64,000 nt of DNA from Laetmonice hystrix. Lineage: Eukaryota. How positions within the stretch are numbered: position 1 is the first letter of the stretch; every line of letters begins with the position of its first letter. This document shows positions 5,101-56,182 of the stretch, one piece after another. The DNA lies in NCBI GenBank assembly GCA_965235115.1, contig OZ249439.1, forward strand, positions 21,638,001-21,702,000, read 5' to 3'. Both the position numbers and the translations under genes were made by a program. Below the pieces are notes generated by a model, which saw only the letters and a list, made by a program, of their open reading frames with translations, had not been told where the DNA came from and searched no databases.

Positions 5101-7530
5101 TTCTGATTCACAAGTTTAAGTAAAAAAGAAAAGATTTCCACGGCTTTTTCTCCACTAGATTTCTAGACAGGATTTTCAGGCCTGGTTATCGAATTCCATG
5201 ATTTTACAGACCCGATAAGTATAGAGGTCTTTGATGACTTTATTTGGCTGACAGTAATATATTGGTATCCCTCATCCTGGTTATATTGCCTTTCATACTC
5301 CAAACTGCCATTTACAGCCTATTGGTAGGTCAGTGTACTTACTTGAACTCCTCAACTGTGCCGGTGACCTCATTGGGCATTGGTGTGTCTTTGACAGCTT
5401 TAGAATCCCTGGAAAGACAGTTGTCTCTAATTAGAACCAACAGACATCAGAGATAACATGAATGAACTGCTTTAAACACTAACAACTGCAATAAATCATG
5501 CTGAATACATAGTTCACATTGACGCATTATTTTAACAAATACACATAACCTCATTGTTACTCTTCCACCTGGGTTAACAGCCAACAATGATGCTTCACAA
5601 TGAGAGTATTGTTAACAATTTGACACCCACCCAGGTTTGCCATTGGTGCCTGACGTGGCAGCTGCTGTCGTCTTTGGGTCAATGCCACCCAGTCCTTTAC
5701 TAGCTACGCCGGTTGTTGATGACTGGAATAAACTACCAGTGCCTGCGGCAGCAGTTGACCCACCTGAAATTAGTGAAATTAGTACCAACAGACTTTTACA
5801 ACATGTCTTGGGGTCGAGGCCATTAATAACACTCTGGTATTAGTTATGGGTATAACTTTGTACAATTAATTTCCTGATGTAGAGATGCATGATCTGATAT
5901 AGCCGAGGGTGCTGAATACACAACCACAGCTATTGATTTGCATCTTACCTAAACCGAGAGAGAACCCTGCTGTAGATGCTGTTGGGGCTGTCCCAAATCC
6001 CCCTAAGGTTAATCCTGGTTTACTTGTTGAGGTAGCTCCGAGTCCTAGACTAAATCCTTCAGACAAAACAAAATTGATGATTATAATAACAGGAAGCATA
6101 AAACAGTTTTACCTACATTTAAATAAATTATTATCAAGTACACTGCTAAAATAAAAGTGCTACAACTTTGTCATTTTCATTTTAAAGACCATATTCTAAA
6201 TTGAAAAATCCAGAAATTGTAGGACATGTGAACATTGATTTGCAATAATTCGATGACTGTGAGATGCATTGAAAATAATTATCAGAGGTCAAATTTCACC
6301 ACAGCAAATGGCATAATGCCCCCCATCTTTGCTGTAATGCCCTTAAGTTTTGTCTCTAACAGCATTACACTGAGCAGTACCGGTACCCCTTTTGGTCTCT
6401 TGCCCTGGGTGCCCTCCCTCATAGTTTGCCGTAATGTCCCTTTGGAACTTATAAATTTGCCTTGAAGTCCTTGGACAGTCACTGGAAATGCCTTGGTGCC
6501 CTTATAGGAAAGGTTGTGAACGGCAACAACTGCAGTGCCCCTTGACAAACGACCCCTGAATTATTGTGAGAGTCACTCACCAGTGTTTGGTTTGCTAGCC
6601 CCCAAAGTCTGGCCTGTTGTTGCTGTCCCTGTAGTTGATGTTGCAGCCCCAAATCCTGTTCCAAATCCAGAGGAACCTAATGTCAATCCTGTAGCTGGCT
6701 TGGCTGCTCCCCCTCCGAGTGCTCCAGTTGCACCAAATGATGAAAACCCTGTTGTGGACTGGGTAGTGGTGGTGCTTGTGCTGGCCCCGCCACTGCCGCC
6801 AAAGTTAAAGGATGAACCAGTGCCAAGGGGCAGAGCTAGACCCGTGGAGGCTGTCGTGGAGGCGGCAGTTGAACTGGCTGCACCAAACCCAGTGGCGCCG
6901 CCGAGTGTGAACCCACCAGGCTGAGTGCCCGTTGTAAGGTTCAGTCCGGTAGAACCAACTGTTGCAGTGGGTTTTACAGTGGCTGTGGCCGCACCAAACC
7001 CACTGAACCCACTGGTCGGATTGGTTGTCTTGGCCGTCTGTCCAAAGTTAAATCCACTGAAACAGATAACAAAACAATAAAAAGAACATGATGAGCGTCC
7101 TTCAGGCTTCACTGTAGGAAAGTATGTAACGAGATGCTTCTAAGAAGTTCTAAAGACTAAGTTCTATTGAGATAACAGGTTTAACGGAGATCTATACAAC
7201 TTTTTTTTATGTTTTAATCCCAGTTCCTGGACAACGGACAGAACAGGTGGATGACCAATTGAGACCGAGAGCGGCTCAACGGGGGCGCGCGGCGCGGCCG
7301 CGGGCCCGAGCGCGGGGCCGAGCGCGGGCCCGAGCGCGGGGCCGGGCCAGGCCAGTGCACGCTGACACTGTGGACCGTGTCACAGTGACAGTGTGTGTGG
7401 TAACAGCACTGGATCATCGACCTATTCGAGTTAAACCAAGTCCTAGATTTTACCTGGAACCGCCCAGACCGGTTGCCGCTTGAGTCGTGGCCGTGGCGCC
7501 GACATTTCCAAAAGAAAATCCCGTACTCAT
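2188..7530 (-). CDS. NUP58: nucleoporin p58/p45 (NUP58/NUPL1), 12 coding exons, about 675 aa
   Basis: Exons (minus): 7530-7454, 7056-6581, 6056-5949, 5763-5631, 5408-5343, 5043-4789, 4368-4250, 4124-4042, 3776-3575, 3432-3298, 3168-3037, 2429-2188. All are GT-AG with matching phases, 2028 nt in total. Starts MSTGFSFG as in human Nup58; FG-rich ends; coiled-coil core DSKAVKD...REEIDRMSSKQMYKVQEEVSLLKQLLSL...QELKNAEMAQRTKDLPPGLQYENTAPTEYF...YRQQIEEME...GPTPFTGMSNAAAIAMA; ends LQKPPAGKKGKKT*. Confidence 0.97.
6283..6558. mobile_element. MITE in NUP58 intron 2
   Basis: Termini CAGAGGTC / GACCCCTG, flanked by direct repeat AATTAT on both sides; internal (G/A)TGCCC(T) repeats. Confidence 0.55.
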
Positions 7531-7841
7531 TCTCCAAACTTTTCTTGTTTCCACTCTCCCGCAAATCAAACATGGCGGATCTCGGAGTCTCGCGGACGAT
7601 AGAGATTTACCCCCTAAAGTATAGCAAAACTAGGTCCCAAAACTATATTCGTCGTCGATTCGTTTAAATTATTTATCTTGAATACAAAGTCCCAAAAGAT
7701 ATTTTTCTGTTTGCCGTTTGAACGACGTTAGTTTACCTTTTGTTATCACGTGACTTCGAGACACACCCCCCCCCCCCCGATGTGACATGGCCGCGGAAGA
7801 TCGGCAGTGACAAGAAAGAAGCTACAAGGCCTCTCTCAAAC
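7531..7841. promoter_or_regulatory. bidirectional promoter NUP58 / MTMR
   Basis: About 310 bp between divergent ATGs; YY1-like AACATGGCG (about 7569), E2F-like TCCCGCAAA (about 7557), E-box/CLEAR-like TCACGTGAC (7746-7754), a second ACATGGC near 7784; CpG-rich. Confidence 0.8.
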
Positions 7842-7865
7842 ATGGAACACATACGAACGCCAAAG
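7842..7865 (+). CDS. MTMR6/7/8: myotubularin-related protein 6/7/8, coding exon 1 (MEHIRTPK)
   Basis: ATG GAA CAC ATA CGA ACG CCA AAG|GTACAT; MEHIRTPK matches the MTMR7 start (MTMR6 is MEHIRTTK); phase 0 joins the exon at 46422. Confidence 0.92.
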
Positions 7866-13349: not shown

Positions 13350-14730
13350 GTAAGGATCCAATCAGATCGCAATCAGGGATTCTGTCCGATCGGTCGGCAC
13401 CGCGACCAAACGTCTCGTTGCCAAGCCAACATGCCGCCCAACAGGCTGTCGGGGGCGCCGTGCTATATTTAGCTCCAGCGTCCTGCCTTGGTTGCCGATC
13501 ATCACTCTGGTCGGTTCAATAGGAGGTGGGTGTGGGCGGGAGGATGGGGGGGGGGGCGTTCAGTGGAAGGGTTGAACCTCCGCTTGCTGCATGCGAAGCC
13601 GTTATTCCCTGACGAAGTTATTGCCTAGAATATCAAATGATCAGGCCTCGTCCGAATGTTGAGCATGCTAAACATCACCTTATTCATTTAGGATTGTTTC
13701 TTGTACCGTGGTATAGGTGGTATAGGTTCCCCGTTGTACCATCAGTGGGGGGAATGAGCGAGGTGGAAGTGGGGGACATGAAGGAGAGGTGCTGCTGAGA
13801 TGATCTGAGCAATGTCATGGAATGGTAGATAGATGCACAGGACAGGTGTTGTTCAGTCAAGTGACAGGTTGTCAATGAACAGTAACCACTGTTCAATGAC
13901 CAGCCCCCTCGCCTGGTACACACACCAATTCTGGGTACCAGGATATCACTGGTTTACGGGGTACCTATGTATTAAGTGTGTTTTTCTTTTTAAATGCACG
14001 GGCATCAGATGTAACCCAGTTACTTTGAGAATGTCCGGAAAGAGAAAGGTTGTACAGTATAGTCCTCTAGGCATGGAATCGAACGTGGGGGTGTGTGTGT
14101 GTGTGGGGGGGGGGGGGGTTACCAGTGTGTGGTGGGGGTGGCGGGGGGGGGGTTGGGGGGGTGTACCAGTGTGTGGTGGGGTGTGGAGGGGGGGGGGGAG
14201 GGGGTACCAGTGTGTGGTGGGGTGTAACGATGCATCAGTGGTGGAGATAATACGCCTGTGTTAGTGATGTTGAGGAAGCTGGTAGGAGACATGTTGGGAA
14301 ACCTTGGAGTACGGGGAGTTGAAGGAAACAGTTGTAGCAGACAGGTGGAGACGGTGGCAGTCGCCGCCCGCCATTCATTGGTTAACGTGTTCCCAGTGGC
14401 GGGGCCGGGTTTCATTCAGTCTGGCCGTGCATTGAGTGAATATTGATGCCCCCCCCCCCCACTCCTTCTCCTCCTGCTCACACTGAGACCAATCAATACA
14501 CATAGGGTAGGATGGAGACAGGGGTGTCCGGCAGCTAGCCGGGGCCGTGCCGTCAGAACCTAGGTCGATGAACCACCCACCCCGGTCTGGTGCAAGGTCA
14601 GCAAGGCAGACACGTGGCTACTGCATCTAGACTCTCGCTTTCCTGAGGTGAAACTCTGGTTGCTGGAGAAGTCAGCAGCACGTGGACCTGCTCTTGGTTT
14701 GAGACGCTGACCTTGGCAACACGTGACCCC
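13350..14730 (+). promoter_or_regulatory. putative internal (alternative) promoter region
   Basis: CpG-rich; CCAATCA (13358), RFX-like GTTGCCAAGCCAAC (13417-13430), TATATTTA (13464), CCTTGGCAAC-ACGTGAC (14711-14727); lies upstream of the 15468 exon. Confidence 0.4.
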
Positions 14731-15165: not shown

Positions 15166-15334
15166 GTGGGCGGGTTGCTCACACGTGTAGCAGTGAATGC
15201 TACACACAGTGGGCGGGTTGCTCACACGTGTAGCAGTGAATGCTACACACAGTGGGCGGGTTGCTCACACGTGTAGCAGTGAATGCTACACACCGTGTGC
15301 GGGTTGCTCACACGTGTAGCAGTGAATGCTACAC
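15166..15334. repeat. 43-bp tandem repeat, about 4 copies
   Basis: Unit GTGGGCGGGTTGCTCACACGTGTAGCAGTGAATGCTACACACA; each contains CACGTG and the stem GTGTAGCA/TGCTACAC; the first three units also contain GGGCGG (the fourth has GTGCGG). Confidence 0.92.
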
Positions 15335-15467
15335 GATCACTGGACAGTCGGTATTGTCAGTCGGTCCCCCGCCGGACCAGCCCCTCACACCCACCAAACC
15401 ATCATCACACCATCTATTGGCAGAGGGGACGTAGGGGCGGCATGGAAGCCTGGGCTGGGCCCGGCAC

Positions 15468-15821
15468 ATGGAGTCCTCCACCGACACACTGATGCTGTCC
15501 TCTACCGACACCCTGCCGTCCTCGGGAACGTCCGCCGGGAGGGACGCCGCCATGGAGGAGGACGAGCTCTACCATCGGATATACCCGACTGAGGAGGATC
15601 AGGTTGACAAGGTACCACCAGCTCCCTCCATCAAGGATTACAAGGACCATCCGATCGGCATGGCCAAGGTGCAGGCCCAGCGACGTATGACCCAGCTCAA
15701 ACACTTGGGTAAAATCGTCGAGTGTCACTATGAGAAACGGGCGCGTAAAGTACGTCAGTTTATACAGGAGCGGATGAGTAGTGTGGACGAGGCCGACTCG
15801 ACCGCTGACACCTCCCTACAG
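15468..15821 (+). CDS. candidate alternative first coding exon of MTMR6/7/8 (118 codons)
   Basis: Coding-like ORF with GC-rich third positions, MESSTDT...MEEDELYHRIYP...ERMSSVDEADSTADTSLQ, ending CAG|GTAGGC; phase-0 donor compatible with the phase-0 acceptor at 46422. Confidence 0.6.
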
Positions 15822-16479
15822 GTAGGCCTGCCCACAGTCAGGGCTCAAACACAATGACGTCCTGGAAACTCTCAGCATAACGTATGCATGCATAGCGGGA
15901 TTACATTAAAGGGATGTGTATAGAATATATCCATTTAAAAAATTAATACGATGGCTTATGTATTGTCTCCGGGATTGGATACAAAGCCAGCACAAAATCA
16001 TCAAATTCGGGGATTAGAAGAGGACTAGAGGTTTTCTGAAGGTTATTGGTCAATATCAAATTAAATAAATACCTTCGCTGATGGTTATACGATAAAGGCA
16101 ATCCTTGATTTGGGGGATAGGTTGATGGATATATCCTTTATATCCCTTTAACTGGTATATCACCTTTGTTATATTTAGTTGTTATCATTTCGGTCTGATT
16201 TTACTGTGTCGTCCTTTTGTATTTTATATTAGTGGTCCTTGAGATTAGTGAATGATTTCTTTGCAATTTGTTACTTGGGTTTAACGGCTGTTTTGGCCAC
16301 CCTGTATACATTTTGCATGCTGAACGTGCCTCACCCGCGCTGTTTGTTTTTGTAGTTTTAGTTGTTAAAACCTTCCCTTCTCCTTGACTCATTTGTCCGT
16401 GAAGTCTCACGGATAGTAGAAAAATTAATGAAGATAATTACGATCAAGACGCGGGTGTATTATTATAAATGTTTTGGAT

Positions 16480-22649: not shown

Positions 22650-23360
22650 CCTACATGAAGTTCTTTCCATTTTCTTGATCATAGTTTCTATAATTTGGTC
22701 TATGCTTTTAGTTTAGATTTAAATTAGATGTCCAATGGTTTGCACTGTAATGCTGTTCAATAATGTTTTTATTTTTTGCGTTGGGCACTTGCTTATGGTG
22801 GTTTCCTGAATGGGAGTTTGTTTCATCTTTATTTTAAATGAATTTTGAACATGAAATTTGAGATGTGTCCGAAAAGAGGGGCCACACGAGACATGTTTGT
22901 ACGCGGACCGCATGCATTGCGTAATTAAAATTAAAAGTATACGATCTGTTAGAAGTGATAATAGGCCGGGGTATGTAAAATTCCAATCTGTTGAATTTTA
23001 TCGCAGCATTGCCTTTACAACTGGTGATGGTATATACCAAGTAGAAATCATCACATTAAAAATGACTGGTAGGAAGTATTTTTCTGGTGGCCATTTTTTT
23101 TTGTATATCTGCCTGTTATTTGCTGTTGATGATGTTTGATAATGGGATTCGTCGATTTGTTGTTGGCTTGTAGACGAGAGGTACAAAGCGGGGTTTAGAT
23201 GGGCTTGGCGATAGACCAGTCCGATTTAATGATGCATGGCTGCTCTTCTGCAAGGTCAGTCACTGTCACCGTGTAATACACGTCATTGGTTGTCACATCT
23301 GTGTCTCAGTGATTGCCCCTGCCTGTCAACTTTGCAGTATTCGTGTCCCGCTCTGCCGCC

Positions 23361-23397
<37 letters not shown>

Positions 23398-24000
23398 ATT
23401 GCTGTTGCTAATTTTGTTTAGAGCCTGTTGTTAATATAGTGAGCACATGTAGAAATGAATCCAGCTAACGCATTGACGGAAATGATGAAGCCGCGGCTGG
23501 ACTATTCCTGTTTAATAAACCAAAAGGTATTTTTGTGCGGATATTGATCAAGTTTTCAAAATCCGTGATATCATGATATTTTTGAGGTGATATTTTTGAA
23601 GGCAGAAGAACCAAGTTGAACAATGTAACCAAGACATTAAGATGAATTGGTTGTGTTTGACAGTGTATATTATGTATGAGCTGCTCTCCCACGTATACAG
23701 GCTGTTTATGTGATCAGTTTGCATGCCGTGATCCCAGGGCCAGAGAATATCAATAAATCGTGTTTTCCCCTCACCAGGCCTTTTTCTGACCTTTGAAGTG
23801 ATTACTATGCCTGCCACGATTTGATTAGATTTCTATTTTATCTGTCTTTCTTTTCTGGATGCCAGTTCCCCGTCATATATAGCGGTCAAATTGTCGCCGT
23901 TTTGTATGTGCCAGTCATAGCTCATGTTTGATATCGTATGGTGTGGCGAGAACTTTCTAAAATAAACATGTTCACTCCCGCTTATTTACGTAATGGATTT
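22650..24000 (-). mobile_element. decayed Penelope-like element (RT + GIY-YIG)
   Basis: Minus: KTRFIDILWPWDHG (compare W.RYIDDIF.IW.HG) at about 23750, then ITSNRSY / LILITQCMR...GPSFRTHLKFH...KQTP at about 22850-22950; RT-before-endonuclease order is correct; includes a (CTG)n tract at about 23367-23397. Confidence 0.55.
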
Positions 24001-26491: not shown

Positions 26492-26810
26492 TTGGCGTAA
26501 GAAGTATATGGAAATGATGCCTTGTCGCAGGCTTGGCGTAAGAAGTACATATATGGAAATGATGCCTTGTCGCAGGCTTGGCGTAAGAAGTATATATATG
26601 GAAATGATGCCTTGTCGCAGGCTTGGCGTAAGAAGTATATATGGAAATGATGCCTTGTCGCAGGCTTGGCGTAAGAAGTATATGGAAATGATGCCTTGTC
26701 GCAGGCTTGGCGTAAGAAGTATATGGAAATGATGCCTTGTCGCAGGCTTGGCGTAAGAAGTATGGAAATGATGCCTTGTCGCAGGCTTGGCGTAAGAAGT
26801 ATATGGAAAT
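26492..26810. repeat. 39-45-bp minisatellite, about 7-8 copies
   Basis: Unit TTGGCGTAAGAAG(TA)nTGGAAATGATGCCTTGTCGCAGGC; length varies through the embedded TA run. Confidence 0.95.
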
Positions 26811-27544
26811 AGGATTTTGTATCAGGCCAGATTATGAGGGCGCCTAACGGAATGTAGTATGTATCAGATGTAGCATACGAAGTGTCATTTCATCTACAAC
26901 ATAGAACGACTTCTAGCATTCTTCTGCATTAGTAGAGGAGTTGGGCGTTCCTTCAGTCTGTCATTTCTTACATTCTACTATTTACTAATATAAAACTGTC
27001 ATACAAGACACTTGTATATTATCACAGAAGTAAAAGAAGTAACACCAGATACACCAATATCTACAATAACATCAATATAAAATAGAGTCACATTATCGAG
27101 AAAATGCCTATGTCGACCTGACGGTATCTGGGGTTAAGCTCATTGTCGGTGAAAGCGTGAGCAGATGGTCCGGTTGCCATGGTGCTGGCTCGGCTACCAT
27201 GCCCAAGGTACATTTGTAGCCTTGGTATGACGAATCGCCCTGAGTTACCTATACATACTAATAACACCGGGGGCAGTTTACAGATGGTGGTCTTCACAGA
27301 GGGAGGAATCCATATCCCTGACAAATGCGAGAAGTCATGGGTTCAGGAAACTCCTATGTTGAGTCGTTCATTTCAAGGATTGTGTTGTGAAACCTGAAAG
27401 GCAGTGAAAGACACTATTCCTTTAAAAACACATCGTCAAATATAATTGATTAATAAATCTTCGTGTTGATTGGAACACTAATTAAAGGTTTATGTGCGTG
27501 TTTGTGTGTGGGGGGGACCACACTGTATGGTGGGCTATGTACAG

Positions 27545-28519
27545 TATGGGGAGGACCGTACTGGTCGGTTATATACAGTAAGGGGAGGACCACACTGGTT
27601 GGTTATATACAGTAAGGGAAGGACCACACTGGTTGGTTATATACAGTAAGGGAAAGACCACACTGGTTGGTTATACAGTAAGGGAAGGACCGTACTGGTC
27701 GGTTATATACAGTAAGGGGAGGACCGGACTGGTCGGTATACAGTAAGGGGAGGACCACACTGGTTGGTTATATACAGTAAGGGAAGGACCACACTGGTCG
27801 GTTATATACAGTAAGAGGAGGACCGGACTGGTCGGTTATATACAGTAAGAGGAGGACCGGACTGGTCGGTTATATACAGTAAGGGGAGGACCACACTGGT
27901 TGGTTATATACAGTAAGGGAAGGACCACACTGGTCGGTTATATACAGTAAGAGGAGGACCGGACTGGTCGGTTATATACAGTAAGGGAAGGACCACACTG
28001 GTCGGTTATACAGTAAGGGAAGGACCGTACTGGTCTGTTATATACAGTAAGGGGAGGACCACACTGGTGGGTTATATACAGTAAAGGGAGGACTGGACTG
28101 GTCGGTTATATACAGTAAGGGGAGGACTGGACTGGTCGGTTATATACAGTAAGGGGAGGACCACAGTGGTCGGTTATATACAGTAAGGGAAGGACCACAC
28201 TGGTCGGTTATATACAGTAAGGGGAGGACTGGACTGGTCGGTTATATACAGTAAGGGGAGGACCACACTGGTTGGTTATATACAGTAAGGGAAGGACCGT
28301 ACTGGTCGGTTATATACAGTAAGGGAAGGACCACACTGGTCGGTTATATACAGTAAGGGGAGGACCGTACTGGTCGGTTATATACAGTAAGGGGAGGACC
28401 AAACTGGTCGGTTATATACAGTAAGGGAAGGACCACACTGGTCGGTTATATACAGCAAGGGAAGGACTGGACTGGTCGGTTATATACAGCAAGGGGAGGA
28501 CCACACTGGTCGGTTATAT
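27545..28519. repeat. about 35-bp minisatellite, about 28 copies
   Basis: Unit GGGGAGGACCACACTGGTCGGTTATATACAGTAA with variants. Confidence 0.95.
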
Positions 28520-28945: not shown

Positions 28946-31217
28946 AGGGTATTCCGTACACTTGTAGTTTACGGTAGCCGCATATACAGCTGCAGTAAAC
29001 GGCAGTCTGTGAGGGCGTCGACCACGGTGCACCAAGTCGGCAGTCGACAGGCCGAGATCGATGTTTGACTGGGCGGGATCCGCCCCCCCCCCCTCCTCCC
29101 CCCTCCACGCACATAGCCAGACGCCAGCTACAGGCCTCCATTACAACACAGTGCTGGCAGCTGACCTAATGAGCGCAGGGTGGGTTCGAGAAAATTTACA
29201 CACATAGCAAGGGAAACACCGGGCGAATTCTAGTGAAGTAAAAAAAAGAGAGAAAATAACTATTGATTTACGAGAGAGTGTCAGGCAGAGTGGATGCTGG
29301 TGTAACCTGTGAAACGGGAACACTGCCACTAGTAGGCTGTCATTGAAAGTCTGAGATAAGTAATTATCTTTGATTACGTCATGAGTTTATACCTGAAAAT
29401 AAATATCTACGTTTATTGGTTCCGTTACCGGGGTATGGTAAGAGAAGGGGTAGTGGAACAAATGCGTAACAGTGCCGATCCTGCTTAATGTGTTATATAA
29501 TACAACAAGCTAAGGCTGGATATTTAATATTAATTAGTCGTAAATCCCAGGGTGTCAATAACTCTTTGAACAACCCCATCCATGTGCAGCCATGTAGTTC
29601 GCCACCATCAGTCTGTTGTGTCCAGAAAGAGGCGGTTTATCGGCTAGCAACCGAAATATCGCTAGCTATTTCTGCGTGAACAAGCTATGTCGCCTGAGTT
29701 AGGTCGCCTCGCTATTCCGGCTGTGACCACGGTTTAGTGATCCCGAACATCGACCTCTGTCTGAACACACACTGCCGGATTAAACTATACAACGGAGGGC
29801 TGTCGGCGGCACTTCTCGCGATAAGACAGGTCGCTTCGCTGCCGGTATATCGCCTGTGTCTGAAAGCTAGGCAGAAGATCGGTAAATAGACAGGAGCAGT
29901 CGTCCGACGACAGCATAAAACACACAACAACTAGCTGCCCCACAGTGCTCACTGATTGCCAGTCATTCAACATTATTACTTCAGAACTTTTCCTTTTATA
30001 ATTCAGCGATAGAAAACATCTTGATCGTTAATTAAATCAGTAAATATTCAAAATCCAGGCAACAGAATTTATTGGGCGTATTCATTAGCGTTTTTTAAAG
30101 ACTAAGTCTCAGGACTTTTAAAGTTTTTAGTAGCAGCTGTAATTAATTCAACTGTGTGATGCCAATGACGTTAGTGTGAAGCCACTTGGAATGCTATAGC
30201 GCAATACATTGCCTAATGATTGTGTGCTACCTTCCCTAGGCACAAGGTTCTGTTTGTTCTTCAGATTCTGGACCGAGTATGCATATTGATTGTGATATTA
30301 TTTTAAACATTCATAAGGCTATTTAATCCACAGCTTATAATTGATTTTGTTTTATCATTTAAATTCACAGGAGGCTTTTGATGTATTAAAGTTACCAGCC
30401 CGTAATGCACGTATAGTTGTCTGCATAAAATTGATTTCTGTTAAACCGTGAAACTCGACTCTGATGTGCCGGAAACCAGCCCGGTCTATCCCACGAGTAA
30501 CGGATCTAACGATCGTGAAGACTAGCTAAATTCTGTGATGGAAGTCATGGTAAAATGTGTTTCAATGACTGAGAACCATAATTTGGTATGGACTATCATG
30601 ATATCTAAGTGCAAAAATTGCGTGCGGTGCGAGGCAGTTAGAGTGTTACTGTGTCTTTTTTTAAGAATCAGATATCATACCGACGTTTATGCTCATATAT
30701 CTAGAGTGTGTTTGTGACCAGTTTTCTTTTTTTTTCAGGTGGGTGCTTGCTTAATGTCTCAACAGATTGCAGATCGTCAGATAAGTTTTTCATATTAAGT
30801 GTCGCTCCAGGTGATGGCCCGATGATTTTAAGTATTACTTAACACAAAATCAGACTGCCCTGCGTTCAACTAAAATTACGCTTAAATTTTAAACGAACTC
30901 TATCTACCCTTTTTGTCCAGTCATTTTGTCGCTCCTAGCCACCTAGCCATATTGTGACACTGAGCCCTCGCCCAGCCGCTCCTCGCTCAGCCATTCTGTG
31001 GCTACCAGTCACAGCTCATGTAGCCGGGTGGTTCCCAGTCGCCCCTTAACGTTTTATGGTCATCAGCCCCCCCCCCCCCTCATCAAGACATGTCGTGCAT
31101 GGCTACCAGCCACTCACCATCAGCCCCTCACTCAACCATTTCATGGTTCCCAGCAGCCCCTCACCCTGGAGCCTATCAGCCACTGCCTGGCCAGCCATAT
31201 TGTGGCTATCAGCCGCT

Positions 31218-33078
31218 GGGGCCCGAGTCTGAGGCCGTGGTATGGACTGGGGAATGGGTTAGGGGAGTGGATTGGTTCTGGGGCCCGGGTCTGAGGCCGT
31301 GGTATGGACTGGGGAATGGGTTAGGGGAGTGGATTGGTTCTGGGGCCCGGGTCTGAGGCCGTGGTATGGACTGGGAAATGGGTTAGGGGAGTGGATTGGT
31401 TCTGGGGCCCGGGTCTGTGGCCGTGGTATGGACTGGGGAATGGGTTAGGGGAGTGGATTGGTTCTGGGGCCCGGGTCTGAGGCCTTGGTATGGACTGGGG
31501 AATGGGTTAGGGGAGTGGATTGGTTCTGGGGCCCGAGTCTGAGACCGTGGTATGGACTGGGGAATGGGTTAGGGGAGTGGATTGGTTCTGGGGCCCGGGT
31601 CTGTGGCCGTGGTATGGACTGGGGAATGGGTTAGGGGAGTGGATTGGTTCTGGGGGCCGGGTCTGAGGCCGTGGTATGGACTGGGGAATGGGTTAGGGGA
31701 GTGGATTGGTTCTGGGGGCCGGGTCTGAGGCCGTGGTATGGACTGGGGAATGGGTTAGGGGAGTGGATTGGTTCTGGGGCCCGGGTCTGTGGCGGGTGGT
31801 ATGGACTGGGGAACGGGTTAGGGGAGTGGATTGGTTCTGGGGCCCGAGTCTGAGGCCGTGGTATGGACTGGGGAATGGGTTAGGGGAGTGGATTGGTTCT
31901 GGGGCCCGGGTCTGAGGCCTTGGTATGGACTGGGGAATGGGTTAGGGAAGTGGATTGGTTCTGGGGCCCGGGTCTGTGGCCGTGGTATGGCCTGGGGAAT
32001 GGGTTAGGGGAGTGGATTGGTTCTGGGGGCCGGGTCTGAGGCGGGTGGTATGGACTGGGGAATGGGTTAGGGGAGTGGATTGGTTCTGGGGCCCGGGTCT
32101 GTGGCGGGTGGTATGGACTGGGGAATGGGTTAGGGGAGTGGATTGGTCCTGGGGCCCGGGTCTGTGGCCGTGGTATGGACTGGGGAATGGGTTAGGGGAG
32201 TGGATTGGTCCTGGGGCCCGGGTCTGTGGCCGTGGTATGGACTGGGGAATGGGTTAGGGGAGTGGATTGGTTCTGGGGCCCGGGTCTGTGGCCGTGGTAT
32301 GGCCTGGGGAATGGGTTAGGGGAGTGGATTGGTTCTGGGGGCCGGGTCTGAGGCCGTGGTATGGACTGGGGAATGGGTTAGGGGAGTGGATTGGTACTGG
32401 GGCCCGGGTCTGAGGCCGTGGTATGGACTGGGGAATGGGTTAGGGGAGTGGATTGGTTCTGGGGCCCGGGTCTGTGGCCGTGGTATGGACTGGGGAATGG
32501 GTTAGGGGAGTGGATTGGTTCTGGGGTCCGGGTCTGTGGCCGTGGTATGGACTGGGGAATGGGTTAGGGGAGTGGATTGGTTCTGGGGCCCGGGTCTGTG
32601 GCCGTGGTATGGACTGGGGAATGGGTTAGGGGAGTGGATTGGTTCTGGGGCCCGAGTCTGAGGCCGTGGTATGGACTGGGGAATGGGTTAGGGGAGTGGA
32701 TTGGTTCTGGGGGCCGGGTCTGAGGCCGTGGTATGGACTGGGGAATGGGTTAGGGGAGTGGATTGGTTCTGGGGCCCGGGTCTGTGGCCGTGGTATGGAC
32801 TGGGGAATGGGTTAGGGGAGTGGATTGGTTCTGGGGGCCGGGTCTGAGGCCGTGGTATGGACTGGGGAATGGGTTAGGGGAGTGGATTGGTTCTGGGGGC
32901 CGGGTCTGAGGCCGTGGTATGGACTGGGGAATGGGTTAGGGGAGTGGATTGGTACTGGGGCCCGGGTCTGAGGCCGTGGTATGGACTGGGGAATGGGTTA
33001 GGGGAGTGGATTGGTTCTGGGGTCCGGGTCTGTGGCCGTGGTATGGACTGGGGAATGGGTTAGGGCAGTGGATTGGTT
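31218..33078 (+). repeat. 62-bp G-rich minisatellite, about 30 copies, G-quadruplex-forming potential
   Basis: Unit GGGGCCCGGGTCTGAGGCCGTGGTATGGACTGGGGAATGGGTTAGGGGAGTGGATTGGTTCT; five runs of 3 or more G per unit. Confidence 0.97.
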
Positions 33079-33744: not shown

Positions 33745-34558
33745 TGTTTGGTGCCATTGGAACCATCAGTAGGGTATTGGTAACCATGTTTGGTGCCATC
33801 GGAACCATCAGTAGGGTATTGGTAACCATGTTTGGTGCCATTGGAACCATCAGTATGGTATTGGTAACCATGTTTGGTGTCATTGAAACCATCAGTATGG
33901 TATTGGTAACCATGTTTGGTGCCATTGGAACCATCAGTATGGTATTGGTAACCATGTTTGGTGCCATTGAAACCATCAGTAGGGTATTGGTAACCATGTT
34001 TGGTGCCATTGAAACCATCAGTAGGGTATTGGTAACCATGTTTGGTACCATTGGAACCATCAGTATGGTATTGGTAACCATGTTTGGTGCCATTGGAACC
34101 ATCAGTATGGTATTGGTAACCATGTTTGGTGCCATTGGAACCATCAGTATGGTATTGGTAACCATGTTTTGTGCCATTGAAACCATCAGTAGGGTATTGG
34201 TAACCATGTTTGGTGCCATTGGAACCATCAGTAGGGTATTGGTAACCATGTTTGGTGCCATTGGAACCATCAGTATGGTATTGGTAACCATGTTTGGTGC
34301 CATTGGAACCATCAGTATGGTATTGGTAACCATGTTTGGTGCCATTGGAACCATCAGTAAGGTATTGGTAACCATGTTTGGTGCCATTGAAACCATCAGT
34401 AGGGTATTGGTAACCATGTTTGGTGCCATTGGAACCATCAGTATGGTATTGGTAACCATGTTTGGTGCCATTGAAACCATCAGTAGGGTATTGGTAACCA
34501 TGTTTGGTGCCATTGAAACCATCAGTAGGGTATTGGTAACCATGTTTGGTGCCATTGG
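33745..34558. repeat. 42-bp minisatellite, about 19 copies
   Basis: Unit CATGTTTGGTGCCATTGGAACCATCAGTATGGTATTGGTAAC; open in three reading frames (ORFs of 314, 327 and 337 aa). Confidence 0.96.
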
Positions 34559-34709
34559 ACCTGAAGCTGCATGGCCTCATTGGATTCAATTGAAGTTCGG
34601 GCCGATAGAAACAGCTGTATCTGCAACCATTGCACTGAAACTGAAGTTGGGGCCAATAAGTTCTAGCTATAGGTGAATCCCATAGAAACATTTTAGCTGT
34701 AACTTGGTT

Positions 34710-35596
34710 GGAACCAATAGAACCAGCTAGTTGGTCTCAACTGAAGTGAGAACCAATAGAACCAAGCAGTTGGAGCCATTGGTCTCAACTGAAGTGAGAA
34801 CCAATAGAACCAGCCAGTTGGAGCCATTGGTCTCAACTGAAGTGAGAACCAATAGAACCAAGCAGTTGGAGCCATTGGTCTCAACTGAAGTGAAAACCAA
34901 TAGAACCAGCTAGTTGGAGCCATTGGTCTCAACTGAAGTGGGAACCAATAGAACCAGCTAGTTGGAGCCATTGGTCTCAACTGAAGTGGGAACCAATAGA
35001 ACCAGCCAGTTGAAGCCATTGGTCTCAACTGAAGTGAGAACCAATAGAACCAACTAGTTGGAGCCATTGGTCTCAACTGAAGTGGGAACCAATAGAACCA
35101 ACTAGTTGGAGCCATTGGTCTCAACTGAAGTGGGAACCAATAGAACCAGCTAGTTGGAGCCATTGGTCTCAACTGAAGTGGGAACCAATAGAACCAGCCA
35201 GTTGGAGCCATTGGTCTCAACTGAAGTGAGAACCAATAGAACCAACTAGTTGGAGCCATTGGTCTCAACTGAAGTGGGAACCAATAGAACCAACTAGTTG
35301 GAGCCATTGGTCTCAACTGAAGTGAGAACCAATAGAACCAGCCAGTTGGAGCCATTGGTCTCAACTGAAGTGAGAACCAATAGAACCAACTAGTTGGAGC
35401 CATTGGTCTCAACTGAAGTGGGAACCAATAGAACCAGCTAGTTGGAGCCATTGGTCTCAACTGAAGTGGGAACCAATAGAACCAACTAGTTGGAGCCATT
35501 GGTCTCAACTGAAGTGAGAACCAATAGAACCAACTAGTTGGAGCCATTGGTCTCAACTGAAGTGGGAACCAATAGAACCAGCCAGTTGGAGCCATT
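34710..35596. repeat. 48-bp minisatellite, about 18 copies
   Basis: Unit TTGGAGCCATTGGTCTCAACTGAAGTGGGAACCAATAGAACCAGCTAG; the minus frame reads (MAPTSWFYWFPLQLRP)n. Confidence 0.96.
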
Positions 35597-37235: not shown

Positions 37236-37371
37236 CTGGATTCTGATCGACCAGTTTTTGAGTGTGGCATACCAATTGGAAAAGGTAAAAGTGGTTTAAT
37301 GAAATTGAATCTTGATTAAAGTAGGAATTTCGCAGGAACGCCAAGCGGTTAATAAGGAGCACCGTACAGCT

Positions 37372-37779
37372 TCATATACCAGCAATAGGTATCGCCTGAC
37401 CATACAGCCTCATATACCAGCAATAGGTATCGCCTGACCATACAGCCTCATATACCAGCAATAGGTATCGCGTGAACATACAGCCTCATATACCAGCAAT
37501 AGGTATCGACTGACCATACAGCCTCATATACCAGCAATAGGTATCGCCTGACCATACAGCCTCATATACCAGCAATAGGTATCGCCTGACCATACAGCCT
37601 CATATACCAGCAATAGGTATCGCCTGACCATACAGCCTCATATACCAGCAATAGGTATCGCGTGAACATACAGCCTCATATACCAGCAATAGGTATCGCC
37701 TGACCATACAGCCTCATATACCAGCAATAGGTATCGCCTGACCATACAGCCTCATATACCAGCAATAGGTATCGCGTGA
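37372..37779. repeat. 38-bp minisatellite, about 11 copies
   Basis: Unit CATATACCAGCAATAGGTATCGCCTGACCATACAGCCT. Confidence 0.95.
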
Positions 37780-46421: not shown

Positions 46422-46538
46422 GTTGAGAATGTGAGGCTGGTGGACCGTTTCAACACGCGGAAACCGGCCATCGGCACGCTCTACCTGACCACCACACACC
46501 TCATCTTTGTGGAACCCTCCGGTAAAAAGGAAACATGG
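46422..46538 (+). CDS. MTMR6/7/8: myotubularin-related protein 6/7/8, coding exon 2 (PH-GRAM domain start)
   Basis: ttctgttgcag|VENVRLVDRFNTRKPAIGTLYLTTTHLIFVEPSGKKETW|gtaagt; 117 nt, phase 0-0; matches the MTMR6/7/8 N-terminal motif GTLYLTATH.IF...KETW. Confidence 0.96.
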
Positions 46539-50711: not shown

Positions 50712-52692
50712 TCTAGAAAATGATGACGAGAAAATGATAACGAGAATGACATTTTGAAACTGTTCAGGGAAAGAAATAGTCCGACTTTATGGAGGGTCAT
50801 TCGGAAATGATCTCTCTCAAGAGAGAATACGATTAGCAGAATAATTCTCTCATGAATCAAATTTATGATAGTTTTTTTTAAGATTTAGAAGCAATCAATC
50901 AATGTTCAGTTATCTTTGACATGTTAATCAATTCCCCAGTTCGTGGAAAACAGGACAAAATCTGTCTGTCCTTGCTTGCCATAAACCTTCATTGTCTGTT
51001 GTTGATTAGGATGGGATTAAATTTCAGCCTTTCAGGCCGGAAATTGAAAACGAATGACGTGATGACACGTAAGCGTGATTTGAATATTGTCAATCCGGTT
51101 TTACAAACTTGACTGAGAGAAACTGTTGTTTCTGGACGCAGCCTCACCAGTTAATTTGTTTAAAAGTGTTCATCGAAAAAACCTGTCTGCGGGATTATGT
51201 TTGGCTAACTGAACCAAGTTCAGATTAATTACATTTTGTCGAATTTTAAAGCGGCCCTGGAGTTGTAACGGTTCGTTATGGTAAATTTCCCCACACAACC
51301 CCATGGAGGCTAGCTGAACTGGGAAACATGAGATAGCGATTTCGGGTTGGTGTCAACATCAAGGGGCATATGTATTCTGTATAGTATAGCCTTCCTAGAT
51401 TTGTCGGGGTATAAGCAAAAATATTGATACGTTCACATCCATTATGAGCATTTCATTCATGGCTTTCTTTATGGTGATATTTCGGTACTGAGAACTTTCC
51501 TAATTTGATCCCACACTGATGTTACACAGCCCCCTCCGGATTCAAGGAGTTGCGGACAGTAAGAACCAAGCTAGTTAGTGTTCATTTCCACAGGGAATTT
51601 CACTTTCTGCCAAGTCTCACATGGGGGTGATCTTAAAATAGGCTATGCTGATGTTGTTGTCAGTTCCCAGGCCATGGAATGTATCAGTTTCCTACCCTTT
51701 GATTTCATTATTCACGGTATAGATACATGCCAGCAGAAGACAAAAGGGAACACAACTTCTAACACTGGCATTAAAGAGCTACATGTATCTAGTTTATCCA
51801 TCAACAACCCCCTCCCCTCGGAAAGAAACAAGAAGTGTTTCAATGGTAGCCCTCATGTCGGGGAATAGCCTAGGTTCGCATAGGTAATTATATGTCGTTG
51901 CTCTAGCAATGGCCACAAATTACGGAAGGGTTTCCAAAGGCATAGAACTGCATCGGCTGTGTATGTAAACAGTCACCAATTCGGACCGAATTGGGAGGAG
52001 TCAGCATTTATTGTTCTGAAGTTTGGGGCCACTATCAGGAAATATTATTGTAGCGAAGTAATTTCATATAAAACTACGATTGAACTGTACTATGAATTAT
52101 TTATGGGTGGTCTTGAGGGGAAGGATTTACTTCGTGTGCCTCTTTAAGGACTGTCCCTAGGTGGCGCTGGGGGCTGGGAGACCAGACACGAGTATAATTG
52201 GTTTGGAAGATGAGAGCCCTTACGGGAATCAATGCGGGGTGACAGGACCCTCCTTGGCCAGGCTCGGGTGGTAACGTCACGTGTTTAGGGGTCGTGGGCC
52301 GAGACTGAGGCACCGATAGCCCCGGGTAGAACCTGAGACGGGGATAGGGGGAGGAGGCCTGGGAGAATAGGGAGGAGGAACCTTCAGGTCTACACCGCGG
52401 GTGTTAGGGCCAGGAAGACGGTCCTTGTCGAACTTGTGTTCTGTTACCTGTGATTTCGAACGTCACTCGCTTCTCGGGAGATTTGCCCTCCGTTACTTTC
52501 GCTTCTCTACTGATTTGCCCTTCGTTTGCCCTCCGTTACTCTCGCTTCTCTGGTGATTTGCCCTCCATTTTCTCTCGCCTCTCTGGTGACCCCCCCCCCC
52601 CGTTCTGTTTCGTCGCCTTCCTCTCTTCATGCCGCCTGCCTTGGGGAGAATAGGTCCACACGTCAGGAGATAAAAATAGGTCAGTCCTTGTC

Positions 52693-53558
52693 TACCCCTT
52701 GTGGGCCTATTGTCGGGAGAGAATAGGTCCGTCCTTGTCTACCCCTGTGGGCCTATTGTCGGGAGAGAATAGGTCCGTCCTTGTCTACCCCTGTGGGCCT
52801 ATTGTCGGGAGGGAATAGGTCCGTCCTTGTGTACCCCTGTGGGCCTATTGTCGGGAGAGAATAGGTCCGTCCTTGTCTACCCCTGTGGGCCTATTGTCGG
52901 GAGGGAATAGGTCCGTCCTTGTCTACCCCTGTGGGCCTATTGTCGGGAGAGAATAGGTCCGTCCTTGTCTACCCCTGTGGGCCTATTGTCGGGAGGGAAT
53001 AGGTCCATCCTTGTCTACCCCTGTGGGCCTATTGTCGGGAGAGAATAGGTCCGTCCTTGTCTACCCATGTGGGCCTATTGTCGGGAGAGAATAGGTCCGT
53101 CCTTTTCTACCCCTGTGGGCCTATTGTCTGGAGGGAATAGGACCGTCCTTGTCTACCCCTGTGGGCCTATTGTCGGGAGAGAATAGGTCCGTTCTTGTCT
53201 GCCCCTGTGGGCCTATTGTCGGGAGAGAATAGGTCCGTCCTTGTCTGCCCCTGTGGGCCTATTGTCGGGAGAGAATAGGTCCGTCCTTGTCTACCCCTTG
53301 TGGGCCTATTGTCGGGAGAGAATAGGTCCGTCCTTGTCTACCCCTGTGGGCCTATTGTCGGGAGGGAATAGGTCCGTCCTTGTCTACCCCTGTGGGCCTA
53401 TTGTCGGGAGAGAATAGGTCCGTCCTTGTCTACCCCTGTGGGCCTATTGTCGGGAGAGAATAGGTCCGTCCTTGTCTAACCCTGTGGGCCTATTGTCGGG
53501 AGAGAATAGGTCCGTCCTTGTCTACCCCTGTGGGCCTATTGTCGGGAGAGAATAGGCC
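52693..53558. repeat. 46-bp minisatellite, about 19 copies, internal hairpin
   Basis: Unit GGGAGAGAATAGGTCCGTCCTTGTCTACCCCTGTGGGCCTATTGTC. Confidence 0.96.
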
Positions 53559-56182
53559 CGCTTTACTTAGGCCGCTCTCGTTGATCATCACACTTCTATT
53601 GCCCGCGGGGCAGTGAGAACGACAGGTATACCAGCGAGCTGATGGAGCCACAACGAATATTGGTGAGGATGGCATGAGAAGCTGACAGCGAGTATCACAA
53701 GGACATTTACTGTTCCGAAGTACGTCAGGCAGACTGATGGAATGATACTAGTGTAGAATATGTGTGTACGTCCAACTTGATAGCTTTGAACATTGTTTGC
53801 AAGAGAAAAAAGACGTCGGTCATCCCGACCAGACTTTACAATGCCTCCTGGGTATGTTAGTTACGGAGGAGATGGGAATGGACGGAGAGAGAATTGTCAT
53901 TGATGATGAAACCCAGCGTTCGGAGCGAGTGTGAGGGTTAGCACGGGCCACAACTGGCCTTCATTGGGTGGTGGTCTCTGACGTAGAGCGTTCACATAAA
54001 AAAAAACACAGAAATGGGTGAGGTACGTGGTGAGAATGGCGAATTGAGGGGACCGGGGGAGGGGGTCAGGTGAGATGGATGTCGGGATTCCGTGACTGGG
54101 GTTTTTAGCGTGGGTGGGCAGGTGGATTTGGAGGGGGTGGGGAGGGGGTGGATACCCGGAGCAGTGTACACCGCACATTTACCCGCGTTACAATCCGTGT
54201 ACGGTAGGAACATTGTCAGACCAAGGGCCGCTTCCATACCATGGCTGATCATATCTGATCATGTTCGATCATGTTTGGCCATGATGCAACCATTTTCTGA
54301 TGCAAAAGGAAAATGGCGAGCACATCTGACATGAAATAAAAGGGAAGTCCTCTTCTTCCGGTTCAATCCAGAATTACTCGAGTAGCCCTGGTGTCCAAGA
54401 GGAATTAACCACCTACGCATGCGCAAATATATTCATAAATAGGCCGTTGCTCTGAACTGCTCATGCGCGGTTATGTTCCAGAAAGACCTTGATTGGGCAC
54501 GGAATGGTAGAGGATAAGACTGACTAGCACTTGTAATATTTCTCTACTGATAGGCCTTAGGCCTAACTATTTAAGGAAATCCTAGTATATAGGAACTATC
54601 ACTTACACAACTCACAATCTGATTTGTTTGGAAATGTTTGGAGAGCTAGGTGCATGTGATGTGTATGTTGTATGAAGCTAGGTGCATGTGATGTATATGT
54701 TGTATGAATGAAACGTCTTTGGAACACTGACAAAGTGAACCTGCTTCATCCGCGTCCTCCGAATGGACGCCGCAAGGAGCTGGTACCGCTACAGAACGTG
54801 TTCTGTTTTCAGTCTAAGGATGTTGCAAACATAAAAAGCGAACTACCCAATATTGTGTCTGTGCTTCTTTTGGTCCTTATCAAGACGCAGCCAGAATGTC
54901 AACAGCAAGTTTTTCCTTTTCTGATTGCTGCATGAGTATAGTTGGTCTCGTGTACAGAAAGGCAATCATGCAGAGCGCCTTGGAAATAGTTGTTTTTTAA
55001 TGCATGTGGTTTGATAGAATCGGATCCGTGATCCGATAGTTACATTTTTCATGAACCTAGTGTCGGGCAGGAATCCGATAATCTGGGATATTAGAAGAAA
55101 CTAGCGGAAACGACTCATATTGCAGCCACATTATAGGAATTCAGATCTGTATCTTATTATAAAGTAGTGTCAACATATTCAACATTTTGACCTGGATGTG
55201 TCGATAATTTCAGAATTGTATCTCAGCGACCTGCACTGACTACGGGCGCTGGGCTATGAATGGGGCTTACTTTAAGCACTCATTATCTGTGGATACTTTC
55301 AGCGGCCGGTGGTGAGTCTGTACACGATAGAGTGATGAGTGGGAGGCCAGGATTGAGGAGTAGGGGCTAAAACTTCAGATTGAAAAGGATCGGAGCTACT
55401 TCCTCTACCCAACGGCTCAGCTTGCGGACAGTGGGAATTGGTGGGCCCTTCCTCCATGGTATCATCCCCACGGAATCCGGGGAGGAGATGTAACTTCCTC
55501 CAACAAAATTTGGTGGGATGTGATGATGGGGGATGTCAGTACCAGCTTGGTGTCAGAACACCTGGGACATTACAATGATAGGAGACCACGGAGGTGGAGG
55601 TGTTGTCAGCGTGAGGGCTGCCGACTGGCCGGATTCCGGGCCTGTGTACACGAGCCATCCGTCAACCTGGGGTGGGGTGTGTACACGAGCCATCCGTCAA
55701 CCTGGGGTGGGGATCGAGAGGACCTGCCCACTGGTGGAGCGGTGGCGAGAGGTAAGGTGTGCCCAACATGTACGCCGGGGACTAGCTGCCTCATAATGCA
55801 TCGAACGGAGACGGGAGGTGGGGGTTCAAGGTGGGCAGTGTCGCTCAGAGTAGGCGGTAGGTGGAGCCACTGATACTGTGGGCGGAGGACGAGTAGGGAG
55901 GTTACGTCAATTTGTCAATTAGTGCTCGTGACAAATACGGGGGCCGTGGTTAGGACGAAGTGATTTCGTTGAGCCTTTGAGCCAGGAGGAGAATTGGAAA
56001 CTAGATTTGAACGCAAGAAAGATTAAAGGTGAAACTTTAAGGTGGGGGTTCTTAACTGTCTGGTCATTTTGTTAGATTTCACGTCACGATGAAGGTTTCA
56101 TGGTGTGGGGAATGGTCCCGACTAAAAGTCTTATGTCTGTCTTTGCATGGGAACAAATCGCTAATGCCTGGATTTCGGCCGT

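What the first reader, a model, noticed from the sequence alone, without database searches (positions are those of the whole stretch)
15468..15821. Candidate alternative first exon giving MTMR6/7/8 a 118-aa N-terminus instead of the 8-aa MEHIRTPK
Seen: a coding-like exon inside MTMR intron 1 ends at a strong phase-0 donor (CAG|GTAGGC), the same phase as exon 1 and the exon 2 acceptor, so ...TSLQ-VENVRLVDRF is in frame. It encodes an acidic/Ser-rich start and a basic, probably helical segment (MAKVQAQRRMTQLKHLGKIVECHYEKRARKVRQFIQERMS) that I do not recognise in MTMR proteins. Promoter-like motifs (RFX-like, CCAAT, E-boxes) lie upstream. Inference: a tissue-specific isoform with a new targeting or interaction module fused to the PH-GRAM domain.
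Basis: partly seen in the sequence, partly recalled or inferred. Interest (0 to 1): 0.75.

Follow-up and report, generated by a model that had tools for sequence, protein, structure and literature searches.

The report
Conserved alternative 5' coding exons in MTMR intron
The 118-codon exon inside the first intron of a myotubularin-related phosphatase gene is a real coding exon kept by selection in four species. A second, previously unnoticed 27-codon exon follows it, but no RNA data were available to show that the two are spliced onto the phosphatase.

Summary
Window 15468-15821 is an ATG-initiated 354-nt open frame ending at CAG|GTAGGC, in phase 0. MTMR exon 1 (7842-7865) and the exon 2 acceptor (46422) are also phase 0.

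An ORF of this size is not significant by itself: the window has 36 ORFs of 100 aa or more. Comparison with relatives makes it significant.
- Orthologous copies exist in three other species, at 59-77% amino-acid identity.
- All four keep the ATG, have lengths divisible by three, and place a GT donor at the same codon boundary.
- Only this frame is open in all four. dN/dS is about 0.09 with synonymous sites near saturation, and similarity stops at the donor.
- It is single-copy in its own genome, so it is not a transposon.

New finding: a second conserved coding exon, B (23174-23254, 81 nt, phase 0-0), lies 7.35 kb downstream in three species. The likelier path is A->B->exon 2.

In one relative, MTMR exon 1 sits upstream of A on the same strand. 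No other conserved exon was found 9 kb and 33 kb downstream of B in two relatives. No RNA data exist, so the link to MTMR is inferred (about 0.6). An independent nested gene remains possible (about 0.3).

Exon A encodes an acidic Ser/Thr-rich disordered head and a basic long helix with no known homologue.

The parts
7842..7865 (+). Canonical MTMR6/7/8-like exon 1 coding part (MEHIRTPK), donor AAG|gtacat, phase 0
   Evidence: The orthologous exon is in species 2 at L002 1234-1257, 8.8 kb upstream of its exon A.
14408..14518 (.). Upstream block conserved with species 2, containing GACCAATCAAT (a CCAAT box), about 1 kb before the exon A start. Possible promoter or enhancer element.
   Evidence: blastn gives 92% identity over 37 nt at 14476-14512, plus flanking tblastx pieces. 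Not found in species 3 or 4. The function is inferred.
15166..15334 (.).
   Evidence: There is no similarity at this position in species 2.
15442..15492 (+). Out-of-frame upstream ATG (GGCATGGAA, G at -3) opening a 16-codon uORF that overlaps the main start codon
   Evidence: An equivalent uATG lies 25-40 nt upstream in all four species. Its role is not tested.
15468..15821 (+). Exon A coding part: 118 codons, from a conserved ATG to the conserved phase-0 donor CAG|GTAGGC
   Evidence: It is single copy. dN/dS is 0.09, and 0.024 in the core. Only this frame is open in all four species.
23174..23254 (+). Exon B: 81-nt coding exon, phase 0-0, ttgtag|ACGAGAGG...TGCAAG|gtcagt, encoding TRGTKRGLDGLGDRPVRFNDAWLLFCK
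   Evidence: Conserved in species 2 (94% nt identity) and species 4 (84 nt, an in-frame 3-nt difference). Acceptor AG and donor AAG|GTCAGT are kept. Over the last 15 codons against species 4, pS is 0.84 and pN 0.06. It is single copy.
46422..46538 (+). MTMR exon 2 (start of the PH-GRAM domain, VENVRLVDRF...KKETW), phase 0 at both ends; the inferred splice target of exon B and/or exon A
   Evidence: Homologous ORFs carry Pfam PF21098, PH-GRAM_MTMR6-like. The junction itself was not observed.

Best explanation
An internal promoter in intron 1 of the MTMR6/7/8-like phosphatase gene drives transcripts that begin at exon A (15468-15821). Exon A supplies its own start codon and is spliced in phase 0 to a small cassette-like exon B (23174-23254). 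Exon B is then spliced to the common exon 2 (46422). The 8-residue MEHIRTPK is thereby replaced by about 145 residues, or 118 if B is skipped.

The added part has four segments:
- an acidic, Ser/Thr-rich disordered head (net charge -7 to -10);
- a conserved IKDYK motif;
- a roughly 45-residue basic helix (net +7, containing KRARKVR);
- an acidic tail, followed by the exon B segment with the invariant RP[VI]RFNDAWLLF.

Most likely it acts as a targeting or regulatory module placed in front of the PH-GRAM domain. For example, the basic helix could bind a partner or an acidic membrane and be masked by the acidic, phosphorylatable head.

Shown: both exons are real, coding, selected and in compatible phase, and they are syntenic with MTMR exon 1 in one relative. 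Inferred: the splice to exon 2, the internal promoter and the function.
For: Exon A:
- Orthologues occur in three other species, with 59-77% amino-acid identity to the window's copy.
- The ATG is kept. Lengths are 354, 324, 342 and 330 nt, all multiples of three. A GT donor sits at the same codon boundary (CAG|GTAGGC, CAG|GTAGGC, GAG|GTAAGA, GAG|GTAGGC). Sequence after the donor is unrelated.
- Only + frame 0 is free of stops in all four species.
- dN/dS is 0.09 overall and 0.024 in the core, with pS 0.68.
- Surrounding intron DNA is unalignable.
- It is single copy in its own genome.

Exon B:
- It has conserved AG and GT boundaries, an in-frame 3-nt length difference, and mostly synonymous changes against species 4.

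Link to MTMR:
- Same strand, inside intron 1, and all boundaries in phase 0.
- Species 2 has MTMR exon 1 8.8 kb upstream of A in the same order and orientation.
- No further conserved block was found 9 kb (species 2) or 33 kb (species 4) downstream of B. This was checked against window 23255-64000 and the next 50 kb of the genome.
- A search of 1.84 billion cluster representatives found no separate protein family containing this sequence. A distinct annotated gene would be expected to leave one. An isoform clustered with ordinary MTMR proteins could go unseen.

Module:
- AlphaFold2 predicts residues 1-60 at low confidence and one helix 62-116, with pLDDT above 90 for about residues 68-102.
- The charge blocks are kept in all four species.
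Against: - No transcript evidence exists. The only public runs holding the stretch are genomic DNA contigs.
- MTMR exon 2 was not reached in either relative, so 'the next conserved exon after B is exon 2' is shown only for the window, by position.
- Phase compatibility alone is weak evidence: about one chance in three.
- A strong-context out-of-frame upstream ATG overlaps the main start in all four species. This questions how efficiently the main ORF is translated, or where the transcript starts.
- No annotated MTMR protein with this N-terminus was seen. The searches could not have seen one, because of length limits and clustering.
Confidence: 0.6

Rival explanations
1. Exons A and B belong to an independent, so far unannotated gene. 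It is nested in the same orientation inside MTMR intron 1, with one or more further exons and its own stop codon and poly(A) site. It never joins MTMR exon 2.
For: - Exon A has its own conserved start and apparently its own upstream elements.
- The product resembles no myotubularin.
- In species 4, neither MTMR exon 1 (10 kb upstream of A) nor exon 2 (33 kb downstream of B) was seen, so linkage to MTMR is documented in only two species.
- A short last exon with a non-conserved 3' UTR would escape the comparisons made.
Against: - No further conserved coding block lies downstream of B in 9 kb and 33 kb of two relatives.
- No protein family with this sequence exists among 1.84 billion representatives, or among proteins of 65-206 aa.
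- The donor of B is strictly conserved and leaves the frame open in phase 0, exactly what exon 2 needs.
- From general knowledge, alternative first exons are far commoner than same-strand multi-exon nested genes.
Confidence: 0.3
2. A short stand-alone ORF: an unspliced 129-aa micro-protein, 15468-15857, translated without splicing.
For: The open frame continues 11 codons past the donor to a stop at 15855-15857. Gene callers reported such unspliced ORFs in the relatives (P0001, P0003, P0008).
Against: - The tails after the donor are unrelated in sequence and length in the four species (VGLPTVRAQTQ, VGQHRYG, VRPSFKSY..., VGDYVRGVVVWLV).
- The GT at the same codon boundary is invariant.
- A downstream in-phase coding exon B exists.
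Confidence: 0.04
3. A chance ORF, a transposon-derived ORF or a conserved non-coding element that merely looks coding.
For: The window holds 36 ORFs of 100 aa or more, and the intron is full of minisatellites and a SINE-like repeat.
Against: - It is single copy.
- dN/dS is 0.09 with saturated synonymous sites.
- All indels are multiples of three.
- Only one frame is open in all four species.
Confidence: 0.02

Closest known systems
Alternative promoter / alternative first coding exon isoforms of animal genes (general mechanism)
   Same: - An exon with its own ATG lies inside intron 1.
- Its donor is in the phase of the common exon 2.
- Conserved upstream elements are separate from the main promoter.
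   Different: - The junction to the common exon was not observed.
- A second small coding exon (B) intervenes.
- The added peptide has no recognisable homologue.
Canonical MTMR6/MTMR7/MTMR8 proteins (PH-GRAM, phosphatase and coiled-coil domains; PDB 2YF0 and 4Y7I)
   Same: - The host gene has the 8-codon exon 1 (MEHIRTPK) and a PH-GRAM_MTMR6-like exon 2.
- Myotub-related exons lie 87-95 kb downstream of exon 1, with the CSDGWDRT active-site motif.
- One exon is 62-69% identical to human MTMR6 and MTMR8.
   Different: From memory, the canonical proteins start directly at the PH-GRAM domain. The proposed isoform would carry about 145 extra N-terminal residues, which match nothing in Pfam or PDB.
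N-terminal extension of MTMR2 and MTM1-type myotubularins (from memory: an unstructured segment before PH-GRAM; phosphorylation of MTMR2 Ser58 controls endosomal localisation)
   Same: A disordered, Ser/Thr-rich segment in front of the PH-GRAM domain that could regulate localisation.
   Different: - There is no sequence similarity.
- This module also has a long basic helix and comes from separate alternative exons.
- The functional analogy is inference only.

Membership tests
Protein-coding exon under purifying selection | Open frame kept in relatives while the other five frames are broken | tested here: met
   + frame 0 has no stops in all four species. Every other frame has 1-7 stops.
Protein-coding exon under purifying selection | Excess of synonymous over non-synonymous change; indels in multiples of three | tested here: met
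   Exon A: pS 0.68, pN 0.15, dN/dS 0.09, and 0.024 in the core. Its lengths are 354/324/342/330 nt. Exon B against species 4, last 15 codons: pS 0.84, pN 0.06, with a 3-nt length difference.
Alternative first coding exon of the MTMR6/7/8-like gene | Lies inside the gene, on its strand, between exon 1 and exon 2 | tested here: met
   Exon 1 is at 7842-7865, exon A at 15468-15821 and exon 2 at 46422-46538, all on the + strand. Species 2 has the same order of exon 1, A and B.
Alternative first coding exon of the MTMR6/7/8-like gene | Own conserved start codon, and a donor whose phase fits the common acceptor | tested here: met
   The ATG and a phase-0 GT donor are kept in four species. The exon 2 acceptor is phase 0. 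Exon B is 0-0.
Alternative first coding exon of the MTMR6/7/8-like gene | Transcripts that join it, directly or through exon B, to exon 2 | not testable with these tools
   No RNA run holds the stretch. The three runs found are genomic contigs that run through exon and intron alike. A scan of JGI metagenome contigs for a spliced B|exon 2 junction found nothing.
Alternative first coding exon of the MTMR6/7/8-like gene | No separate downstream terminal exon of its own | tested here: inconclusive
   No further shared block was found 9 kb (species 2) and 33 kb (species 4) past exon B. Exon 2 was not reached in either relative, and a very short last exon would be missed.
Myotubularin-related phosphatase, MTMR6/7/8 subgroup (host gene) | PH-GRAM_MTMR6-like N-terminus plus a Myotub-related phosphatase domain with the CX5R active site | tested here: met
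   Homologues of exon 2 carry PF21098. PF06602 exons lie at G000:C4:21732776-21740754 on the same strand. VHCSDGWDRT is present. The best PDB matches are MTMR8 and MTMR6.
Transposon or repeat-derived ORF | Multiple copies in the genome | tested here: not met
   Exon A and exon B each match only themselves in the 627-Mb genome. By contrast, the SINE-like block at 6420-6552 has at least 40 copies.
Known structured RNA (alternative reading of the block at 23161-23270) | Match to an Rfam family, or unusually stable folding | tested here: not met
   There are no Rfam matches at gathering score in the window and none of note at E<=1 in 22900-23500. The folding z-score is -0.87.

The most novel reading that the evidence does not exclude
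A lineage-restricted, previously undescribed N-terminal module is grafted by an internal promoter onto the PH-GRAM domain of an MTMR6/7/8-type phosphoinositide phosphatase. The module comprises an acidic phospho-head, a +7 basic long helix and a 27-residue cassette with an invariant RP[VI]RFNDAWLLF. It gives the enzyme a second, differently targeted or regulated form. A conserved overlapping uORF and an unusually constrained cassette exon add translational and splicing control.
Probability: 0.5. Interest if true: 0.55.

Novelty: new variant of a known kind. Interest (0 to 1): 0.45.

Why it matters
MTMR6/7/8 phosphatases remove the 3-phosphate from PI3P and PI(3,5)P2. From general knowledge, they are thought to be directed mainly by their PH-GRAM domain and by the partner MTMR9.

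A selected alternative N-terminus of about 145 residues, with a conserved charge-block design, would point to an unknown way of targeting or switching this enzyme in the lineage concerned. It would also correct the gene model by adding two coding exons and a second promoter.

If instead the exons form an independent gene, it is a conserved protein family that none of the protein and family searches run here detected (Pfam, PDB chains, two large protein collections).

Either way, the result is a concrete, cheaply testable annotation gain rather than a new kind of biology.

Tried and rejected
**Readings rejected**
- Transposon ORF: rejected, single copy.
- Antisense gene over exon A: rejected, because all minus frames carry stops in at least three species.
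- Unspliced micro-protein: unlikely, because the tails after the donor are unrelated while the GT is invariant.
- Block 23161-23270 as an enhancer or non-coding RNA: first suspected because of 94-95% DNA identity with species 2. Rejected after species 4 showed synonymous third-position changes and kept splice sites. There are no Rfam matches and no unusual fold.
- MTMR exon 1 spliced to a possible acceptor at 15423/15424: this would be out of frame with exon A and hit a stop (reading of the sequence).

**Searches that found nothing**
- Known domain in exon A: none in Pfam, PDB or the ESM Atlas by features (best score 0.80, uninformative).
- Long ORFs at 33.6-35.6 kb: these are minisatellite arrays, and their Pfam hits are repeat artefacts.
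- RNA evidence: none on record. The three runs are genomic DNA.
- Two scans of JGI metagenome contigs, one for the spliced B|exon 2 junction and one for the exon A core: 0 matches.
- Literature searches on MTMR7 alternative first exons or isoforms: nothing relevant.

**Contig walks that stalled**
- Species 2: the remaining called genes contain in-frame stops and are not accepted by reference.
- A search with the exon 2 ORF did not return the relatives' contigs.

**Limits of the protein searches**
- Proteins longer than 206 aa could not be searched at 90% clustering.
- No spliced query can be given by reference.
- Annotated long MTMR isoforms with this N-terminus may therefore exist unseen.

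Full report
**1. The observation**

Window 15468-15857 is an ATG-initiated ORF of 129 codons on the + strand. After codon 118 the sequence reads CAG|GTAGGC (15821/15822).

The host gene was located as follows:
- MEHIRTPK is encoded once, at 7842-7865, followed by gtacat.
- VENVRLVDRF... starts directly after ...ctgttgcag at 46422 and runs to 46538, followed by gtaagt.

The ORF alone is no evidence: the window has 36 ORFs of 100 aa or more. It has no Pfam match.

**2. Is it a real coding exon? Yes.**

A scan of 1.84 billion protein representatives returned one true hit. This is P0001, an ORF called on a 466-kb ENA contig. Two word-indexed searches added P0003 (Logan contigs) and P0008 (a 4.2-Mb ENA contig). 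I fetched the DNA around all three and call these sources species 2, 3 and 4.

The four copies behave as follows:
- They share the start MESSTD.
- They have lengths of 354, 324, 342 and 330 nt.
- They end at a GT donor at the same codon boundary: CAG|GTAGGC, CAG|GTAGGC, GAG|GTAAGA and GAG|GTAGGC.
- Beyond the donor the sequences and read-through tails are unrelated.
- Only + frame 0 is free of stops in all four.
- Nei-Gojobori counts give pS 0.68 and pN 0.15 for window against species 2. This corresponds to dN/dS 0.09, and 0.024 in the core KVPPAPS...RM. Synonymous sites are saturated against species 3.
- The intron DNA around the exon is not alignable between the species.
- The exon is single copy in its own 627-Mb genome.
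- In three genomic runs of this species, the only variant listed inside the exon (15806 T>C) is synonymous, while the flanks carry several. This is a weak point, because the tool's table was truncated.

**3.

I compared 30.5 kb of species 2 with the window. Only five blocks are shared:
- the MTMR promoter and exon 1 region;
- a short block near 14476-14512;
- exon A;
- a SINE-like repeat with at least 40 genomic copies;
- a block at 23113-23290.

The core of the last block reads ttgtag|ACGAGAGG...TTCTGCAAG|gtcagt. It spans 23174-23254, 81 nt, and is open only in the frame set by a phase-0 acceptor.

Because it is 94% identical to species 2, I first suspected a non-coding element. Rfam and folding gave nothing.

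Species 4 settled it. Its copy lies 24.4 kb downstream of its exon A. It is 84 nt long, keeps the AG acceptor and the AAG|GTCAGT donor, and differs mainly at third codon positions. Over the last 15 codons pS is 0.84 and pN 0.06. The peptide ...DRP[VI]RFNDAWLLF[CS]K is conserved.

Exon B is thus a coding exon in phase 0-0. It fits behind exon A, and arithmetically also behind exon 1, and it fits in front of exon 2. The likely coding path is A->B->exon 2 (145 added residues), with A->exon 2 (118) possible if B is skipped.

**4. Which gene do A and B belong to?**

Evidence for the MTMR gene:
- Same strand, inside intron 1, and all phases compatible.
- Species 2 carries MTMR exon 1 (ATGGAACATATACGAACTCCCAAG|gtaatt) 8.8 kb upstream of its exon A, in the same order and orientation.
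- I walked 9 kb (species 2) and 33 kb (species 4) past exon B. No further block was shared with window 23255-64000 or with the next 50 kb of the genome.
- No independent protein family containing this sequence appeared among the 1.84 billion representatives. An isoform clustered with ordinary MTMR proteins could stay hidden there; a separate annotated gene should not.

Evidence against, or missing:
- No RNA data exist. The only runs holding the stretch are genomic contigs.
- Two pattern scans of JGI metagenome contigs found nothing.
- Exon 2 was not reached in either relative.
- In species 4, exon 1 is not within 10 kb upstream of exon A.

I put the MTMR-isoform reading at about 0.6 and an independent nested gene at about 0.3.

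**5. The host gene**

- Myotub-related (PF06602) exons follow on the same strand at G000:C4:21732776-21740754, that is 95-103 kb in window coordinates.
- The active-site string VHCSDGWDRT is present.
- One exon is most similar to human MTMR8 and MTMR6 among solved structures, at about 62-69% identity by eye from the alignments.
- Homologues of exon 2 carry PF21098, PH-GRAM_MTMR6-like.
- The genome gave no MHC class I match. Together with the modest identity to the human proteins, this suggests the animal is not a jawed vertebrate. That search has no positive control, so I do not lean on it.

**6. What the added peptide looks like**

AlphaFold2 was run with the four-sequence alignment. It gives low confidence for residues 1-60 and a single helix 62-116, with pLDDT above 90 for about residues 68-102.

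The charge pattern is kept in all four species:
- head: -7 to -10, with 11-17 Ser/Thr;
- helix: +7, containing KRARKVR or KRTRKVR;
- tail: -3 or -4.

There is no match in PDB, and nothing informative in the ESM Atlas.

The mechanism proposed is inference. It is a targeting or regulatory module in front of the PH-GRAM domain, in which a basic helix could bind a partner, a membrane or importin and be masked by an acidic, phosphorylatable head.

**7. Promoter claims**

- Conserved with species 2 is a block at 14408-14518 containing GACCAATCAAT.
- ATTGG or CCAAT strings lie 48-65 nt before the ATG in three of the four species.
- All four species also have an out-of-frame upstream ATG in strong context 25-40 nt before the main ATG. 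Its uORF overlaps the main start. Either it damps translation, or the transcript starts downstream of it. This is unresolved.

**8. Comparison with what is known, and verdict**

Alternative promoters and first exons are commonplace. Myotubularins with regulatory N-terminal extensions are known (MTMR2, from memory). What is new here is the particular peptide, the extra cassette exon and their conservation.

I rate this as a new variant of a known kind and of moderate interest.

Noticed in passing
window 23161-23270: Exon B and about 13-15 nt of intron on each side are almost identical between the window and species 2 (pS 0.10). Synonymous sites of exon A in the same species pair are near saturation (pS 0.68). 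This points to extra constraint at the nucleotide level, perhaps a regulated cassette exon. It remains unexplained.
   Followed up: partly
window 15442-15492; L002 about 9976; L003 about 2780; L008 about 9889: A conserved out-of-frame upstream ATG (G at -3, ATGGAA) lies 25-40 nt before the main start of exon A in all four species. It opens a 14-36 codon uORF that overlaps the main ATG.
   Followed up: partly
window 23213-23227 (exon B peptide RPVRF): The invariant RP[VI]RF string fits the PP1-docking RVxF pattern as I remember it. This is a lead from memory only and was not tested.
   Followed up: no
window 14408-14518: A block conserved with species 2 lies about 1 kb upstream of exon A and contains a CCAAT box (GACCAATCAAT). 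It is a candidate promoter or enhancer element.
   Followed up: partly
window 6420-6552: A SINE-like interspersed repeat with at least 40 copies in the genome. A copy also lies in the species 2 intron, where it mimics a rearranged conserved block.
   Followed up: yes
window 26492-28519, 31216-33078, 33745-35596, 37361-37779, 52675-53560: MTMR introns 1 and 2 are packed with large minisatellite arrays with periods of 34-62 bp and up to 30 copies. These arrays create long spurious ORFs on both strands and artefactual Pfam hits (Bim_N, Crp).
   Followed up: yes
window 7434-7593: A 160-nt block just upstream of MTMR exon 1 is 77% identical to species 2. It is probably the core promoter or 5' UTR of the canonical transcript. 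A 119-codon ORF on the minus strand overlaps it but shows no coding-type conservation.
   Followed up: partly
L002, L005, L006 (ENA ERZ26168297 contig_335): The gene calls recorded for this contig often contain in-frame stop codons under the standard code. The contig was apparently processed with a different genetic code, as if it were microbial. The calls are not real genes.
   Followed up: partly
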